Part shown: positions 34,609 through 46,335 of the stretch, piece after piece | Layout of the letters: the number at the start of each line of letters is the position of its first letter | Numbering within the stretch: position 1 is the stretch's first letter | Virus record (IMG/VR): IMGVR_UViG_3300032294_002797 | Location: 159,303 to 223,302 of that record | Reading direction: 5' to 3' (one strand) | DNA: 64,000 nucleotides | Position numbers and translations under genes: made by a program | Notes under the pieces: model-generated | Seen by the model: only the letters and a program-made list of their open reading frames with translations | What the model was told of the DNA's origin: nothing | Database searches by the model: none

Positions 34609-37272
34609 TTAAATTATCGAATTACCAATCAACTCTTTAAACTTATCAACATTATCAAACTTTGTTGACCAAGAACTTTTCTTGCTATAGTAACTATTAC
34701 TAGAACCAAAACTGAGAGGATTAGTTGAACGAAGTTCACGCAAATCGCCTCGACACTCTTGGCTACACACAATATACTTCAACATCGGCTGTTTGTCAAG
34801 AGCCTCTTTAATACTATTACGCAACTCATCGACTTTCGGCAGTTTATCTTTGAGCGAATAATCTGGCTTGATAAGTTTGGTCATAGATTCTTGCTCATTA
34901 GAACTACCATACAATGTAGCAACCCATCGAATGAGACTATTATAGAGAATATTATTCTGACGAATATCTTTACTATTGATTCCATTCAGCCCAATATTGT
35001 GCAACAGTTTCGTGATATGGGTAAAATAATCAACAGCCTTAAACTTTTGAATATCAAATGATGGTCTATAAATAGTGTCAGCAAAGAATTCAAGAGTCAT
35101 ACACTGATCCATTAGAGATACAAGTTGCTGATCTTTAATGTATTGACCATATTCCAGTCCAAGTAGGTTTAGAACATGAAACATAAACTGCTTATCAATA
35201 CTACCATAGTTATAGTAATTGTAATCACTACCTTTCTGGACTTTATTGTATTCAGACCTAGCGTGTTCTGTAAGACCATTATATTCGGCTAAATCCTTAA
35301 ACTTATTCTCATACAGTTTCTCTAGTCTTTCCTTAAAGAACTTATTGAAACTAATAAGGTTATAGCCCTTCTTGATTAGATCATTAGCATAACTGCTCTT
35401 TATCGCAAAGATTTTAGTATCTCCGAAAAGTTCAGTAGCAAGTGTGCTGTCCTGCTCTTTAATAAAGAGATTCAGATCATGAATACCAGGAAATCCTTCA
35501 ACAGAAGCATATCGCAAGATAGGAATGTATACGATCTCATCCTGTTCAAGAACATCGTCTCTTTCTTCCTGATCCTTAATTTCAAGAAGATACTGAGCAT
35601 CGTTCATAAGATTATCGCTTACGATAGCCCCAGCACTCTTAATCTTACCATGAATCAAGAATAGACTATCCTTACTGACAGAACCAAGAGGATCAACAGT
35701 GCGACCCTTCTTTGAAGGACTACTCAAAAGACTCTTAAAATCCGAGACCTTAAGGAGTTTATCTTCTCCCCCAATATCAGAAATAATCTTTTCAAAACCC
35801 TCAGACGAATCTTCTGGATGGTCGCTGTCGATAAAAAGATAGGCATAGCAATCGTTCTGATTACAATACTTTGTAACAATCTTCTTGGCAGACTCTTCTC
35901 CCTTAACGTCACAAACAAAGAACGCCATAGGATTACTTTTACGATTATTCTGCCAGTAATACTGACCCTTGCCATTCAATGTTTCGGAGTGAATCTTATC
36001 TGTAAGATAAACCATCCTACGAGAACGGTATCCAGAGGTTCTAAAGTTAAAGACGTACAGATTCTTACTCTTTTTAAGAGTGTACTCTAGGTCTTTTCCA
36101 GACTGCAATTCATGAACCTTATTATTAGTATCCGTCCATGATGCTCCCGCAGTCCAGCCACCAGCAAGATCACTAAGATTATAGTATGTTTGATAAGCCT
36201 CAACCAAACTCTTGGCGGTTGACAACTTATTGCTCATATCCTGCTTAAGTTCAAGATAGATTTCTTGAGTACGATCACGCAGAGTCTTGATAACATTTTT
36301 AGTATACTGCAAACCCTCGCGGCTTACATCCATCTCAAGTTCACCAATACCAAATTGGATCTCAAGATATAATCCGGCATTAAGAATCTCTCTGACTAGA
36401 CTCTTCCAATTATCAACGTCGGCTTTACCAAAAGCCCTATTCCACTTTTGAATATGGTCTGGTTGATCGGGCCTATCTTCGCCCACAATTTTACTAGAGT
36501 CTACTGGATACGCAATATTACCCATGATAGCAACAACACCACTACCGGGACTATTATGACCACTAGGATATTTGGTGTGTTCATTACTAACTCGTCCAAT
36601 CTTCCAACCCTTACCTTCGATCACAACATTGTGATGAGAATACGAGCCATCATTAATCGATGAACAAACACCACCATTGATAATAGGCTTAAGTTTGAAA
36701 TAATGGAAAATTCTCTTTGCCTTAGCAGTAAACTCATGAAAGTCATACTGCTTAACAGCAAAACTAATTTCTAGTCCATTCGGTTCCTTGGTATCTGTGA
36801 CACTAACCAAATTCAAACTAGGAACACCGCTTTCATCCATAGCCGCGATATAAGATAGTTTCTTACCATCATAATAAGAAATAGTGCTAAAACTCTTGGT
36901 ATAAGCAAAAGGACTCTTACTACCAAGACCAAGACAACCAACAAAATCATTGCTATCATTCTTGTTAGATGCCCCGTATGTTGTATACAATTCCTCCATA
37001 TCGGTCTGACTAAGACCAGTACCAAAATCTCTAACAGTAAAAGAGGGATTGGTTTGTGTGGGGAGAGTTACCCTAAAAGGGTTTTGATTTTTTGCAGCAA
37101 TATGGGCGTCATAAGCATTTGTGCTAAGTTCACGAATAACCGCCATAACCTTATCGGAATAAAGAGAATCCGAAAGGATCTTAAACATTTTGCTGGTTTG
37201 TGCGATACTAAACTGATTAGCCGACTGAATACCAACCGAATGAATCTCAACCGTCCTGTCTGCCAACTTCAT
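34609..37272 (-). CDS. rIIA: rIIA-like protein (GHKL ATPase N-terminus)
   Basis: LYSDK..RELSTNAYDAH, DFGTGL, GCLGLGSKSPFAY, SREGLQY; directly upstream of rIIB. Confidence 0.9.
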   Translation of the reverse strand: MKLADRTVEIHSVGIQSANQFSIAQTSKMFKILSDSLYSDKVMAVIRELSTNAYDAHIAAKNQNPFRVTLPTQTNPSFTVRDFGTGLSQTDMEELYTTYGASNKNDSNDFVGCLGLGSKSPFAYTKSFSTISYYDGKKLSYIAAMDESGVPSLNLVSVTDTKEPNGLEISFAVKQYDFHEFTAKAKRIFHYFKLKPIINGGVCSSINDGSYSHHNVVIEGKGWKIGRVSNEHTKYPSGHNSPGSGVVAIMGNIAYPVDSSKIVGEDRPDQPDHIQKWNRAFGKADVDNWKSLVREILNAGLYLEIQFGIGELEMDVSREGLQYTKNVIKTLRDRTQEIYLELKQDMSNKLSTAKSLVEAYQTYYNLSDLAGGWTAGASWTDTNNKVHELQSGKDLEYTLKKSKNLYVFNFRTSGYRSRRMVYLTDKIHSETLNGKGQYYWQNNRKSNPMAFFVCDVKGEESAKKIVTKYCNQNDCYAYLFIDSDHPEDSSEGFEKIISDIGGEDKLLKVSDFKSLLSSPSKKGRTVDPLGSVSKDSLFLIHGKIKSAGAIVSDNLMNDAQYLLEIKDQEERDDVLEQDEIVYIPILRYASVEGFPGIHDLNLFIKEQDSTLATELFGDTKIFAIKSSYANDLIKKGYNLISFNKFFKERLEKLYENKFKDLAEYNGLTEHARSEYNKVQKGSDYNYYNYGSIDKQFMFHVLNLLGLEYGQYIKDQQLVSLMDQCMTLEFFADTIYRPSFDIQKFKAVDYFTHITKLLHNIGLNGINSKDIRQNNILYNSLIRWVATLYGSSNEQESMTKLIKPDYSLKDKLPKVDELRNSIKEALDKQPMLKYIVCSQECRGDLRELRSTNPLSFGSSNSYYSKKSSWSTKFDNVDKFKELIGNSII

Positions 37273-39715: not shown

Positions 39716-39989
39716 TAGGGGCTATCGGATTCGAACCGATACTGTACGGATTTTCTTACTACTATAACTTTCGTTACCATTTCTGTTTGTAGTCTGGACT
39801 TTACCTTAACCATAGTTTTCACTTTAGGTTCCTGCCGTCAAGTCTCTACACCTTCATATTTCTATGCTTGGCTCGGTATTGCCATTTTACAGGTTTCACC
39901 GAATTTGACAAGTTCTACTTTAAAGATTTCTCTCTAAGCACTCCAATTTAACTAAAAGTCCGATGACTCTGCCGTTGGTCTAAGCCCCC
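39716..39989 (-). tRNA. tRNA-Leu(UAA), short variable loop, intron-split (exons 39989-39956 and 39754-39716)
   Basis: Spliced 73-mer folds: GGGGGCT/AGCCCCT acceptor, anticodon loop CT-TAA-AA, ATCGG-TTCGAAT-CCGAT T-arm; no encoded CCA. Confidence 0.9.
39755..39955 (-). mobile_element. group I intron (IC3-like), 201 nt, no ORF
   Basis: P AAATTCGGTGAAA, Q AATACCGAGC, R GTAGAGACTTGACGG, S AAGGTAAAGTCC, terminal G; P1 ACTT/GAGT with U.G at the splice site. Confidence 0.9.
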
Positions 39990-40074
39990 ATAATAACCCT
40001 GACTACACAAACCACTGATTTGAGGTTGACTAATGTTGTGCCTCTATCATATCTGTGTAGCCAGAGTTTATTAT
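39990..40074 (-). ncRNA. long rod-like hairpin, candidate ncRNA
   Basis: ATAATAA/TTATTAT plus CTCTGGCTACACAGAT/GTTTGTGTAGTCAGGG with several G.U pairs; inner GAGG/CCTC. Confidence 0.5.
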
Positions 40075-40093
40075 AAGTTGAAATTTACAAAAA

Positions 40094-40375
40094 TCAACCG
40101 TTGCTGTGAGCCTTGAGGCGACGAACAATGTCGGCCATAGCCTCAACATTATCAACCGTCTTAATGGGCTTCGCACGTTCCATAGTGGGCAGTTCAATAC
40201 CCTTCTTAGAAAGAGCGGCCTTGGTACGAGCAAAACGAGCCATCGTACTAGCAACCTTCTGACCAGTCTTTGACGCAATTTCGGCATACGTCTTAGACGA
40301 AAAAACAGCCTCAAGAAACTGCTCGTCACTGCAACGAACTCTTGTCTGCTTATCAACCGTAGTAACTTCAGCCAT
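40094..40375 (-). CDS. small basic HTH-like DNA-binding protein (start probably 40375)
   Basis: SKTYAEIASKTGQKVASTMARF; GGAGG RBS; own promoter. Confidence 0.65.
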   Translation of the reverse strand: MAEVTTVDKQTRVRCSDEQFLEAVFSSKTYAEIASKTGQKVASTMARFARTKAALSKKGIELPTMERAKPIKTVDNVEAMADIVRRLKAHSNG

Positions 40376-45972: not shown

Positions 45973-45979
45973 AATATAA

Positions 45980-46335
45980 TGGAGGCGGCGGGGTACTGCC
46001 CCCCGCGTCTTGTTATATTGTCCACAATATTTTCTACAAGTTTATTTTGTTCATAAATTTTAAACAAGATTAAAGAGCAAACAACATTCATCTTGTCGTA
46101 CCAACTAGTCTCAGGCTAGAACCCGTTGGCTATTCTAGCAGCCGAAGGATTTTACGACAATCTTTTGAACGCTACCTTCATCGCTTTCTAAGATTGTTAC
46201 TGCTTTTTATTAAGCAGCAAGGGCTAACTGAGTATTGCCAGTTAAAGCACTTGATATGATGATTAAAGAGGCCAACATATCATCCTCTACTTGCTTATAT
46301 GGTTTCTAATATTCAATCGATTCTAATTCGCCCCC
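45980..46335 (-). ncRNA. ssrA: tmRNA; tag (A)GNTQLALAA at 46239-46210
   Basis: GGGGGCG/CGCCTCC-A acceptor with G3.U70; TTAACT upstream of the resume codon; tag ends LAA-stop; 356 nt. Confidence 0.92.

What the first reader, a model, noticed from the sequence alone, without database searches (positions are those of the whole stretch)
39716..39989. Phage tRNA-Leu(UAA) interrupted in the anticodon by a self-splicing group I intron
Seen: a 201-nt ORF-less intron between U34 and A35, with P/Q/R/S cores, a P1 helix (ACTT/GAGT) and a terminal G. Known: this is the site and class of the cyanobacterial/plastid tRNA-Leu(UAA) intron; characterised phage group I introns mostly sit in protein genes. Inference: TTA is very common in this AT-rich genome, so splicing could gate supply of a tRNA needed for late genes, or protect the precursor from anticodon nucleases.
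Basis: partly seen in the sequence, partly recalled or inferred. Interest (0 to 1): 0.75.

Follow-up and report, generated by a model that had tools for sequence, protein, structure and literature searches.

The report
Group I intron splitting a phage tRNA-Leu
A T4-like freshwater phage carries a leucine tRNA gene split in its anticodon by a small self-splicing-type intron from the family long known in cyanobacteria and chloroplasts; the same intron turns out to be common but unreported in phage tRNA genes, and the tRNA it interrupts lacks the long arm that leucine tRNAs normally have.

Summary
On the minus strand, 39989-39716 holds a tRNA with anticodon UAA, split between U34 and A35 by a 201-nt ORF-less group I intron (39955-39755).

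- Rfam scores the intron above threshold.
- An alignment of 39 relatives supports every core helix by covariation, including the P3/P7 pseudoknot. The window's copy forms all 61 consensus pairs.
- It belongs to the cyanobacterial tRNA-Leu(UAA) intron family.
- It is not a one-off: at least 100 viral contigs and the cultured Agrobacterium phage Atu_ph07 carry it at the same site. I found no paper reporting it.
This short-arm form keeps the E. coli leucine identity elements and is widespread in phages, mostly without an intron.
- Relatives hold an intron-less short-arm, intron-bearing short-arm or intron-bearing long-arm gene at the same locus. Intron and exon trees conflict, and some introns encode HNH endonucleases.

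Most likely this is an optional, mobile, roughly neutral intron in a working tRNA. Splicing and charging were not shown.

The parts
40070..40097 (-). Sigma-70-like promoter (TTGATT, 16-nt spacer, TATAAT) about 80 nt upstream of the tRNA
   Evidence: Consensus scan, 10 of 12 matches. The -10 box lies in an insertion that related loci lack, so relatives are probably transcribed by read-through. Function is inferred only.
39997..40066 (-). Conserved ~70-nt leader hairpin ending a few nucleotides before tRNA position 1
   Evidence: MFE -29.1 kcal/mol, z = -5.4. Present in all 26 syntenic loci, with a conserved inner motif and an outer stem that changes sequence but keeps pairing. No Rfam family matches. 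Role unknown.
39956..39989 (-). 5' exon: tRNA positions 1-34 (acceptor 5' strand, D arm, anticodon stem 5' strand, C32 U33 U34)
   Evidence: ARAGORN with intron search; exon comparison.
39755..39955 (-). Group I intron, 201 nt, ORF-less; first base 39955, terminal (omega) G 39755
   Evidence: Rfam RF00028 56.3 bits; consensus structure and covariation; 0 of 61 consensus pairs broken in this copy.
39941..39958 (-). P1: last exon bases C-U-U plus the first intron base (39958-39955) paired with internal guide GGAG (39944-39941); the U.G wobble marks the 5' splice site (U at 39956)
   Evidence: U.G is invariant in 39 of 39. The adjacent pair is A-U in most relatives but U.G in the window.
39916..39940 (-). 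P2 hairpin with GAAA loop
   Evidence: All 10 pairs show changes on both sides across relatives; coordinates.
39796..39912 (-). Catalytic core. P3 39912-39907/39836-39831; P4 39902-39897/39878-39873; P5; P6 and P6a 39872-39850; P7 39846-39840/39801-39796, a pseudoknot with P3 that contains the invariant G-C pairs of the presumed guanosine-binding site; P8 39830-39808
   Evidence: P3 has 6 of 6 pairs with compensatory changes. The one variable P7 pair shows AU, UA, GC and CG.
39758..39793 (-). P9 (ACTAC/GTAGT) enclosing a small hairpin and P9b (TAAC-GAAA-GTTA)
   Evidence: P9b has 4 of 4 pairs with compensatory changes.
39716..39754 (-). 3' exon: tRNA positions 35-73 (A35 A36, anticodon stem 3' strand, 5-nt variable loop ACAGT, T arm, acceptor 3' strand, A73)

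Best explanation
Window 39989-39716 (minus strand) is a phage gene for a tRNA that reads UUA/UUG, interrupted between anticodon bases U34 and A35 by a compact ORF-less group I intron of the tRNA-Leu(UAA) family.

Proposed mechanism, all of it inferred from structure and from what is established for this family:
1. The precursor is transcribed from a promoter upstream of a conserved leader hairpin.
2. The intron folds into P1-P9. A guanosine bound in P7 attacks after the U of the U.G pair in P1 (U at 39956).
3. The freed exon end attacks after the terminal G (39755), joining ...GGACUU to AAAAUCC....
4. Host RNase P and the host CCA-adding enzyme finish a 73-nt tRNA, which host LeuRS most probably charges with leucine.

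The tRNA supplies TTA, the phage's commonest Leu codon, alongside nine other phage tRNAs that read mostly A/U-ending codons. The intron itself is best read as an optional, horizontally exchanged, near-neutral genetic element rather than a regulator. The tRNA belongs to a short-variable-arm lineage that arose once and is widespread in phages.
For: Intron identity and integrity:
- Rfam score above threshold.
- RNAalifold, with no prior input, recovers P1, P2, P3, P4, P5, P6, P6a, P8, P9 and P9b plus the exon-exon anticodon stem; 39 of 55 pairs are compensated.
- With P7 added: 96.9% of cells paired, covariation 0.54 against about 0.08 for slid controls, 0 of 500 shuffles as high.
- The window copy breaks 0 of 61 pairs and keeps every invariant base.

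Family: cyanobacterial tRNA-Leu(UAA) loci (L155, L185, L208, L231) align throughout.

Junction: the same site is used in all 152 family members. Intron-less short-arm genes read exactly GGACTTAAAATCC. One of them (L314) is identical to the joined exons of intron-bearing L085.

Working tRNA:
- 16 unique short-arm exon sets show compensatory changes in all four stems, with invariant U8, A14 and A73 and a 15:48 pair that switches from A:U to G:C.
- A73, A15-U48 and G18G19 are the E. coli leucine identity elements; the long arm and the anticodon are dispensable (PMC9976931).
- TTA/TTG codons align with Leu in homologues as often as CTN codons do.
- The phage has no LeuRS-type domain and no CCA-adding enzyme.
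- TTA is 41% of Leu codons.

Optional and mobile intron:
- In 34 syntenic intron-bearing loci, 20 hold long-arm and 14 short-arm genes. At least 15 further syntenic loci are intron-less.
- The window's intron is 96% identical to one in a long-arm gene and sits in a 97-99% supported clade whose other members are all in long-arm hosts.
- The AU test rejects a single clade for introns of short-arm hosts (p = 3e-5), whereas short-arm exons form one group (99.9 support).
- About two dozen related introns carry ORFs, and 5 of the 10 tested scored above Pfam's HNH cut-off.
Against: - No experimental or RNA evidence for splicing of this gene. Four metatranscriptome runs held only relatives of the intron core and no exon-exon joint.
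- The window copy has a second U.G pair directly after the splice-site U.G, which could allow some mis-cleavage.
- It also has a U27.U43 mismatch at the top of the anticodon stem, unique among the 16 short-arm sequences. Exon pairing in that stem is reported to matter for the Anabaena intron; I know this only from the title of a paper cited and did not read it.
- Leucine charging is inferred from E. coli rules, and the host is unknown.
- The AU-test group was named after I had seen a first tree.
- The exon tree rests on only 69 columns.
Confidence: 0.8

Rival explanations
1. One reading: the intron is kept because it does something useful. Either splicing times the supply of tRNA-Leu(UAA) for TTA-rich late genes, or the interrupted anticodon loop shields the precursor from host anticodon nucleases.
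For: - TTA use is very uneven: 42-56% of Leu in the large structural block, but under 15% in about 23 genes clustered next to both tRNA loci, including the RIIA homologue with 2 of 79. A TTA-poor versus TTA-rich gene partition therefore exists.
- tRNA-cleaving defences countered by phage tRNAs are documented (PMC13096335).
Against: - Close relatives carry the same tRNA at the same locus with no intron, so the intron is dispensable.
- The codon split is a general GC3 difference (0.35 against 0.23). Control A-ending codons with no phage tRNA drop about as much as tRNA-matched ones.
- A precursor cannot translate, so shielding it protects nothing once the tRNA is mature.
- Nothing in the sequence suggests regulated splicing.
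Confidence: 0.07
2. The short-arm, G1.U72 tRNA(UAA) is the adaptive part. It would be a phage-evolved substitute for host tRNA-Leu(UAA) that escapes host nucleases recognising the long variable arm or acceptor end, and the intron would be a passenger.
For: - The short-arm form arose once and is conserved with covariation.
- It occurs in at least 119 intron-less viral contigs and in cultured phages of many hosts.
- No convincing example appeared among the 51 bacterial intron-bearing genes: 50 are long-arm, and the single 75-nt call (L205) does not share the family's anticodon loop and was treated as an ARAGORN artefact.
- G1.U72 is found in 17 of 17 short-arm viral genes, 21 of 48 long-arm viral genes and 3 of 47 bacterial genes.
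- Retron-Eco7 and Septu cleave the variable loop of long-arm tRNA-Tyr, and T5 tRNA-Tyr resists through a different variable loop.
Against: - No nuclease aimed at tRNA-Leu's variable arm was identified here.
- Intron-less bacterial tRNAs were not surveyed, so restriction to phages is not shown.
- The short arm could simply be tolerated because LeuRS does not need it.
- This idea adds to the best explanation rather than excluding it.
Confidence: 0.2
3. The gene is decaying: an inactive intron stuck in a tRNA pseudogene, giving no functional tRNA.
For: - The window's tRNA has a U27.U43 mismatch and G1.U72.
- The intron has no endonuclease gene.
- The gene sits far from the phage's main tRNA cluster.
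- Splicing is unproven.
Against: - 0 of 61 intron pairs are broken, against a median of 1 and a maximum of 10 among relatives, and all invariant bases are kept.
- All tRNA tertiary and identity positions are intact.
- G1.U72 is the family norm, not damage.
- A promoter-like site and the conserved leader hairpin lie upstream.
- This is the phage's only tRNA for its commonest Leu codon.
Confidence: 0.05
4. The short-arm tRNA(UAA) is not a leucine tRNA. It would be charged with another amino acid and so recode UUA/UUG.
For: [quoted passage not shown] ARAGORN names it from the anticodon alone.
Against: - TTA and TTG codons in conserved window proteins align with Leu in 62-75% of positions, the same as CTN codons (65-75%), whether the homologue's phage has a short- or long-arm tRNA.
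- A73, A14, A15:U48 and G18G19 match the leucine identity set.
- Most other synthetases that accept A73 read the anticodon, which is my general knowledge and was not tested here.
Confidence: 0.04

Closest known systems
[quoted passage not shown]
   Same: Same insertion point between U34 and A35, and the same flanking exon sequence GGACUU|AAAAUCC. Same helix set, P1-P9 with the P3/P7 pseudoknot, and the same conserved core blocks. Cyanobacterial loci found here (L155, L185, L208, L231) align throughout.
   Different: - The host gene is in a virulent-type T4-like phage, not a cell or organelle.
- The exons are a short-arm tRNA.
- Sequence identity to a cyanobacterial intron is about 63% (L185), and the cyanobacterial introns form their own 100%-supported clade.
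- The window copy is smaller: cyanobacterial copies carry extra sequence in the P5 loop region.
- The IC3 label was not formally tested.
The same intron in other phage tRNA-Leu(UAA) genes: Agrobacterium phage Atu_ph07, huge-phage assemblies LR756501 and LR756511, and at least 100 IMG/VR contigs
   Same: Homologous intron at the identical site. The nearest are 92-96% identical (L106, L015, L083). Many contigs share the window's flanking genes.
   Different: About three quarters interrupt ordinary long-arm tRNA-Leu. About two dozen carry ORFs, several confirmed as HNH endonucleases. None is annotated or, as far as I could find, described; in Atu_ph07 the gene is unannotated and a hypothetical CDS overlaps its 3' part.
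Other bacterial tRNA group I introns: tRNA-Ile(CAU) of Azoarcus, tRNA-Arg(CCU) of Agrobacterium, tRNA-fMet of cyanobacteria
   Same: Small ORF-less or endonuclease-bearing introns in anticodon loops, with exons that pair as the anticodon stem (review PMC3984707). My genome scan with the shared core motif also returned ARAGORN calls for split tRNA-Met(CAU) and tRNA-Arg(CCU) genes.
   Different: Different tRNA hosts and insertion points. I did not compare them in detail, and ARAGORN's intron mode also gives false calls, so those counts are only indicative.
Classical phage group I introns: T4 td, nrdB and nrdD; SPO1 DNA polymerase; Twort; Cluster J mycobacteriophage capsid and tail genes
   Same: Self-splicing-type introns in virulent phages, often with homing endonucleases. 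They show presence/absence polymorphism among relatives.
   Different: All of those sit in protein-coding genes; this one sits in a tRNA gene. Related intron cores do split the capsid genes of Pelagibacter phage HTVC120P and KM23-C739 and a crAss-like DNA polymerase gene.
Animal mitochondrial tRNA-Leu(UUR)
   Same: A leucine tRNA with anticodon UAA and no long variable arm, recognised through A73 and A14.
   Different: An unrelated lineage with degenerate structure. The phage tRNA keeps a full canonical cloverleaf, G18G19 and the T-loop.

Membership tests
Group I intron (Rfam RF00028) | Covariance-model score at or above the curated gathering score | tested here: met
   56.3 bits against 50, full-length match.
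Group I intron (Rfam RF00028) | P1 helix in which the last exon base is a U paired with a G of the internal guide | tested here: met
   U at 39956 pairs with G at 39943. The pair is U.G in 39 of 39 relatives.
Group I intron (Rfam RF00028) | Conserved core P3-P8 including the P3/P7 pseudoknot | tested here: met
   All helices are supported: 96.9% paired, 40 of 61 pairs compensated, controls far lower. 0 of 61 pairs are broken in the window.
Group I intron (Rfam RF00028) | Terminal guanosine (omega G) at the 3' splice site and a G-C pair in P7 for guanosine binding | tested here: met
   G at 39755 is invariant, and the P7 G-C pairs are invariant in 39 of 39. Actual binding was not tested.
Group I intron (Rfam RF00028) | Self-splicing with guanosine and Mg2+ | not testable with these tools
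   No RNA run holds this phage; only relatives of the core were seen.
tRNA-Leu(UAA) anticodon intron family (cyanobacteria/plastids) | Insertion between positions 34 and 35 of a UAA anticodon | tested here: met
   ARAGORN with intron search and exon alignment. An intron-less twin confirms the junction within the family.
tRNA-Leu(UAA) anticodon intron family (cyanobacteria/plastids) | Sequence and structural homology to the cyanobacterial introns | tested here: met
   Aligned with four cyanobacterial loci across all helices; about 63% identity to L185.
tRNA-Leu(UAA) anticodon intron family (cyanobacteria/plastids) | Subgroup IC3 assignment | not tested
   No subgroup classifier was available. 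The layout is consistent, which is a lead only.
Bacterial-type tRNA-Leu (class II tRNA) | Leucine anticodon after splicing | tested here: met
   UAA; anticodon loop CUUAAAA.
Bacterial-type tRNA-Leu (class II tRNA) | Long variable arm of 10 nt or more | tested here: not met
   The variable loop is 5 nt (ACAGT) and the spliced length is 73 nt. By shape it is a class I tRNA.
Bacterial-type tRNA-Leu (class II tRNA) | E. coli LeuRS identity set: A73, A14, A15-U48, G18G19 and D/T-loop contacts | tested here: met
   All are present in the window and in 16 of 16 short-arm sequences; the 15:48 pair is A:U in 14, G:C in 1 and G:G in 1. The rules come from PMC9976931.
Bacterial-type tRNA-Leu (class II tRNA) | Charged with leucine | tested here: inconclusive
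   Indirect only: TTA/TTG align with Leu as often as CTN codons do. No biochemical test was possible.
Mobile (homing) group I intron | Intron-encoded homing endonuclease | tested here: not met
   The window's intron has no ORF (201 nt). About two dozen relatives carry ORFs, and 5 of the 10 tested scored above Pfam's HNH cut-off.
Mobile (homing) group I intron | Presence/absence polymorphism at one site, with intron history differing from exon history | tested here: met
   Syntenic intron-less and intron-bearing alleles. AU test p = 3e-5 against a single exon group.

The most novel reading that the evidence does not exclude
The locus would be a hot spot of phage-host and phage-phage conflict over one tRNA. 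The short-arm, G1.U72 tRNA-Leu(UAA) would be a phage-specific version that evades host tRNA-cleaving defences aimed at the long-arm host tRNA. The intron, spread by HNH endonucleases among co-infecting phages, would then be retained in ORF-less form because it destroys the endonuclease's target in the anticodon region of the DNA and so protects the gene from cleavage.
Probability: 0.15. Interest if true: 0.8.

Novelty: new member of a known kind. Interest (0 to 1): 0.55.

Why it matters
- **Gap in the record.** Phage group I introns have been textbook examples for decades, but a 2014 review said all of them sit in protein genes despite the many phage tRNA genes. This window, with at least 100 viral contigs and a cultured Agrobacterium phage, shows that the classic tRNA-Leu(UAA) intron is common in phage tRNA genes and has been missed. 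Standard tRNA finders skip it: ARAGORN's default mode returned nothing, and the Atu_ph07 gene is unannotated.
- **Annotation.** Phage tRNA counts are too low, and spurious 'hypothetical proteins' get called over split tRNA genes.
- **Intron history.** Phages become plausible carriers of the tRNA-Leu intron between bacterial phyla, which bears on the long debate over that intron's age and spread. I did not test direction of transfer.
- **The short-arm tRNA.** A short-arm leucine tRNA that is widespread in phages contradicts the general statement that tRNA-Leu always has a long arm outside animal mitochondria. It is also a ready candidate for the current work on phage tRNAs that evade tRNA-cleaving defences.

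Tried and rejected
- **Default ARAGORN** on the window found no tRNA. Only intron mode works, and that mode also produces many false split tRNAs with other anticodons, so I used only genes with the ...CTT|AAAA... junction.
- **Rfam at gathering threshold** missed the homologous introns in L001-L003. Absence of an Rfam hit is therefore not evidence of absence in this family.
- **RNA evidence.** No run holds this phage's RNA. The one read-laying run showed contigs of related intron cores only (39747-39943), mostly under 95% alike, with no exon-exon joint. A single 'goes back' joint came from a different organism's contig. I rejected this as evidence for or against splicing.
- **Codon test for a tRNA-specific early/late partition.** Low-TTA genes also avoid AGA, ATA and AAA, but control A-ending codons fall about as much and GC3 is higher. 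I rejected the signal as tRNA-specific.
- **T4-type RNA ligase search (PF09511)** was uninformative because the control genomes also gave nothing.
- **Megablast of 20 kb of the window** against cultured phages found only the intron itself, so there is no close cultured relative and no host assignment.
- **Contamination by cyanobacterial or other bacterial DNA** was considered and rejected. The record is estimated 100% complete, has a T4-like RIIA gene, and shares synteny around the tRNA with dozens of viral contigs.
- **A one-base shift of the 5' splice site** to the second U.G pair was considered unlikely, because the guide G is invariant in all relatives. It cannot be excluded without RNA data.
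Full report
**What is there.** The reverse complement of window 39989-39716 reads as the 5' half of a tRNA, then 201 nt, then the 3' half.
- Rfam's group I intron model matches 39965-39774 on the minus strand at 56.3 bits (gathering score 50, E = 1e-11, full model length).
- ARAGORN in default mode reports no tRNA anywhere in the window. With intron search it reports a tRNA with anticodon UAA and a 201-nt intron. The joined exons fold into a 73-nt cloverleaf.
- Exact parts, all on the minus strand: 5' exon 39989-39956, intron 39955-39755, 3' exon 39754-39716 ending in A73. No CCA is encoded.

**Genome context.** The window is the last 64 kb of a single 223,302-bp viral record estimated 100% complete.
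- The genome is 35% G+C. An RIIA homologue lies at 34609-37272, so the phage is T4-like.
- It was assembled from freshwater or aquatic metagenomes. It has no close cultured relative.
- It encodes nine intron-less tRNAs in a cluster about 180 kb away: Lys-UUU, Glu-UUC, Ile-UAU, Ser, Asn-GUU, Gln-UUG, Thr-UGU, Asp-GUC and Arg-UCU. This is its only split tRNA and its only group I intron.

**Is the intron real and intact?** I aligned the intron plus 8-nt exon flanks with 38 diverse relatives (alignment A1).
- RNAalifold, with no guidance, returned P1, P2, P3, P4, P5, P6, P6a, P8, P9 and P9b plus the exon-exon anticodon stem. Of its 55 pairs, 39 are kept through changes on both sides.
- I added the P7 pseudoknot by hand. 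Its single variable pair shows AU, UA, GC and CG.
- Scoring the full 61-pair structure gave 96.9% of cells paired, against 30-42% when partners are slid by 1-3 columns. The covariation score was 0.54 against 0.07-0.11, and 0 of 500 shuffles reached the observed values.
- The splice-site U.G pair, the terminal G and the P7 G-C pairs are invariant in all 39 sequences.
- The window's copy breaks none of the 61 pairs; the median among relatives is 1 and the maximum 10.
- On sequence grounds it is a complete ribozyme. Actual self-splicing is inferred, not shown.

**Which family?** A scan of bacterial genomes with the conserved core motif returned at least 120 loci.
- ARAGORN found 51 tRNA(UAA) genes split at the same place. 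They come from Cyanobacteriota, Pseudomonadota, Acidobacteriota, Vulcanimicrobiota and others.
- The cyanobacterial ones are the classical tRNA-Leu(UAA) intron. They align with the window through every helix, at about 63% identity to L185.
I did not formally test the IC3 label.

**It is common in phages.**
- Blastn against cultured and uncultured phage records found the same intron in Agrobacterium phage Atu_ph07 and in two huge-phage assemblies. All are in tRNA-Leu(UAA) at the same site, with introns of 278, 205 and 700 nt.
ARAGORN confirmed 102 split tRNA(UAA) genes among them.
- In Atu_ph07 the gene is unannotated, and a 'hypothetical protein' is called across its 3' part.
- Seven further literature searches returned no report of a group I intron in a phage tRNA. 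The library lacks most subscription journals, so this is not proof.

Its variable loop is 5 nt, so by shape it is a class I tRNA. [quoted passage not shown]
- Of the 102 viral split genes, 25 have this short form.
- Across 16 unique short-arm sequences there are compensatory changes in the acceptor, D, anticodon and T stems.
- U8, A14, C13xA22, G1.U72 and A73 are invariant. The tertiary 15:48 pair is A:U in 14, G:C in 1 and G:G in 1.
- This is the signature of a working tRNA, not a relic.
- The elements the review lists as decisive for E. coli LeuRS are A73, A15-U48, G18G19 and the D/T-loop contacts. The long arm and the anticodon are dispensable. All the decisive elements are present.
- As an independent check against recoding, TTA and TTG codons in conserved window proteins align with Leu in homologues 62-75% of the time. 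CTN codons do so 65-75% of the time.
- The phage encodes no LeuRS-type anticodon-binding domain and no CCA-adding enzyme, so host enzymes must act on the tRNA.
- The window's copy alone has a U27.U43 mismatch at the top of the anticodon stem.

**The short-arm tRNA does not depend on the intron.**
- A scan for the uninterrupted form hit at least 119 further viral contigs. These gave 120 tRNA(UAA) genes of 73-79 nt, 95 of them unique, and 48 with an encoded CCA.
- Cultured phages carry similar genes annotated 'tRNA-Leu'. Hosts include Prochlorococcus, Synechococcus, Bacillus, Lactobacillus, Streptomyces, Mycobacterium, Pseudomonas and Myxococcus. Only some of these matches were full-length, and I confirmed the short arm directly only in P-SSM7.
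- In P-SSM7 the gene is 73 nt and sits beside tRNA-Ile(AUA), tRNA-Arg(AGA) and a gene annotated 'tRNA ligase'.
- I found no paper commenting on the missing arm.

**The intron is optional and has moved.** Many of the viral contigs are relatives of this phage, with flanking proteins 55-93% identical.
- In 34 loci a homologue of the window's neighbouring genes lies within 400 nt of the split tRNA. Twenty of these have a long-arm gene and 14 a short-arm gene.
- At least 15 more syntenic loci hold an intron-less short-arm gene.
- One intron-less gene (L314) is identical to the joined exons of an intron-bearing one (L085). This also confirms the splice junction independently.
- The window's intron is 96% identical to one in a long-arm gene (L106), closer than to any intron in a short-arm gene. 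It sits in a 97-99% supported clade whose other five members are all in long-arm hosts.
- An AU test rejects a tree that keeps the introns of short-arm hosts together (difference in lnL 166, p = 3e-5).
- A tree of the exons with the variable region removed puts all 16 short-arm genes in one group (99.9 support, one change).
- Reading: the short arm arose once, and introns have been exchanged between the two tRNA-Leu lineages, which share little beyond the anticodon stem-loop.
- About two dozen related introns (480-945 nt, all in long-arm hosts) carry ORFs. Five of the ten I tested scored above Pfam's cut-off for HNH endonucleases. The window's intron has none.
- Caveats: I chose the AU-test group after seeing a first tree, and the exon tree has only 69 columns.
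- A further caveat concerns sampling. The bacterial scan could have found phage-type introns, yet only 3 of 49 were of that type. Phage-type introns therefore look rare in the sampled bacteria. The reverse was not tested.

- TTA is the commonest Leu codon: 41% of Leu, 33 per 1000 codons, eighth most used codon overall.
- Its use is uneven. It makes up 42-56% of Leu in the large structural block. It is under 15% in about 23 genes clustered beside both tRNA loci, including RIIA with 2 of 79.
- That fits a split between genes tuned to the host tRNA pool and genes that rely on phage tRNAs. However, those genes simply have higher GC3 (0.35 against 0.23). Control A-ending codons with no phage tRNA drop about as much. 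The signal is therefore not specific.
- The intron is dispensable in close relatives, so a required gating role is unlikely.
- Shielding a precursor from anticodon nucleases protects nothing once the tRNA is mature.
- I could obtain no RNA evidence. Four metatranscriptome runs contained only relatives of the intron core.

**A more interesting but untested possibility.** Retron-Eco7 and Septu cleave the variable loop of long-arm tRNA-Tyr. Phage T5's tRNA-Tyr escapes because its variable loop differs (PMC13096335).
- A short-arm tRNA-Leu, with a G1.U72 pair found in 17 of 17 short-arm viral genes, 21 of 48 long-arm viral genes and only 3 of 47 bacterial genes, could be a comparable escape form.
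- An ORF-less intron could likewise be kept because it removes the endonuclease target from the gene. That idea is my inference from general knowledge of phage homing systems.

**Flanks.**
- A sigma-70-like site (TTGATT, 16-nt spacer, TATAAT; 40097-40070) lies upstream. It sits in an insertion that relatives lack.
- Between it and the tRNA is a 70-nt hairpin (40066-39997; -29.1 kcal/mol, z = -5.4). All 26 syntenic loci examined have it, with a conserved inner motif and an outer stem that changes sequence but keeps pairing.
- It matches no Rfam family, and its role is unknown.

**Verdict.** The identification as a group I intron in a phage tRNA(UAA) gene is right. The functional speculation is unsupported.
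- It is a new member of a well-known intron family, in a setting (phage tRNA genes) that appears unreported although it is abundant in public data.
- The intron sits in a tRNA whose missing long arm is itself noteworthy.
- Splicing, charging with leucine and any benefit of either feature remain to be shown at the bench.

Noticed in passing
window 39997-40066 (minus strand): A conserved ~70-nt hairpin RNA lies immediately 5' of the tRNA (-29.1 kcal/mol, z = -5.4). All 26 syntenic viral loci have it, with a conserved inner motif (GAGGCACA ... CAACCTCAAATCA) and a covarying outer stem. It matches no Rfam family. It could be a processing signal, a small RNA released by RNase P, or a terminator-like element.
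   Followed up: partly
window 45977-46335 (minus strand): A phage-encoded tmRNA: Rfam RF00023 at 100 bits, full length. The ARAGORN tool did not call it. Read by eye from the Rfam alignment, the tag frame looks like G-N-T-Q-L-A-L-A-A followed by a stop. Neighbouring ORFs are shared with related viral contigs.
   Followed up: no
loci L247-L365 (IMG/VR); L366 = Prochlorococcus phage P-SSM7 117190-117262: An intron-less tRNA-Leu(UAA) with a 5-nt variable loop is widespread in phages: at least 119 contigs and 95 unique sequences. Cultured phages of cyanobacteria, Bacillus, Lactobacillus, Streptomyces, Mycobacterium, Pseudomonas and Myxococcus give similar matches annotated plainly as tRNA-Leu; the short arm was confirmed directly only in P-SSM7. 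I found no paper noting the missing long arm.
   Followed up: partly
exons of loci L007-L245: A G1.U72 wobble pair at the top of the acceptor stem is found in 17 of 17 short-arm viral tRNA-Leu(UAA), 21 of 48 long-arm viral ones and only 3 of 47 bacterial ones. The reason is unknown.
   Followed up: partly
genome G000:C1 about 17-32 kb and 191-207 kb (the latter is window about 32-48 kb): About 23 genes, clustered next to both tRNA loci and including the RIIA homologue (window 34609-37272; 2 TTA among 79 Leu codons), have a distinct codon style. They have higher GC3 (0.35 against 0.23) and almost no TTA, ATA or AGA. The structural block uses TTA for 42-56% of Leu. These could be early genes tuned to the host, or acquired genes.
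   Followed up: partly
L003 = Agrobacterium phage Atu_ph07 (MF403008.1), about 113251-112890: This published jumbo phage has an unannotated tRNA-Leu(UAA) gene split by a 278-nt group I intron. A 'hypothetical protein' CDS (AUZ94936.1) is called across its 3' part.
   Followed up: partly
L002 (LR756511.1) and about two dozen IMG/VR loci such as L030, L047, L065 and L080: Longer versions of the same intron (480-945 nt) carry ORFs, all of them in long-arm tRNA hosts. Five of the ten tested scored above Pfam's cut-off for HNH endonucleases. Two distinct N-terminal types are visible (MKYKYTKEEL... and M..YGPY...).
   Followed up: partly
L004 (Pelagibacter phage HTVC120P), L005 (KM23-C739), L006 (crAss-like cr116_1): Related intron cores interrupt protein genes. 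The capsid gene is annotated in two pieces in HTVC120P and KM23-C739; the latter has two Rfam-positive group I introns at 77-78 bits. DNA polymerase I is annotated in pieces in cr116_1.
   Followed up: no
genome G000:C1 47946-62018 and 75495-91670 (outside the window): Two very large open reading frames of 4,691 and 5,392 aa lie on the plus strand of the structural block. They came from my own crude ORF call and were not characterised.
   Followed up: no
genome G000:C1 19924-20009 (outside the window): ARAGORN calls one of the phage's clustered tRNAs tRNA-Ser with anticodon ACT. An A at position 34 is unusual. I did not check it.
   Followed up: no
window 39747-39943, in RNA runs X21-X24: Freshwater, lake, wastewater and estuary metatranscriptome assemblies contain many contigs 85-99% similar to the intron core, some at word depth around 100. 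Relatives of this intron family are therefore abundant in environmental RNA libraries. Their host genes are unknown.
   Followed up: no
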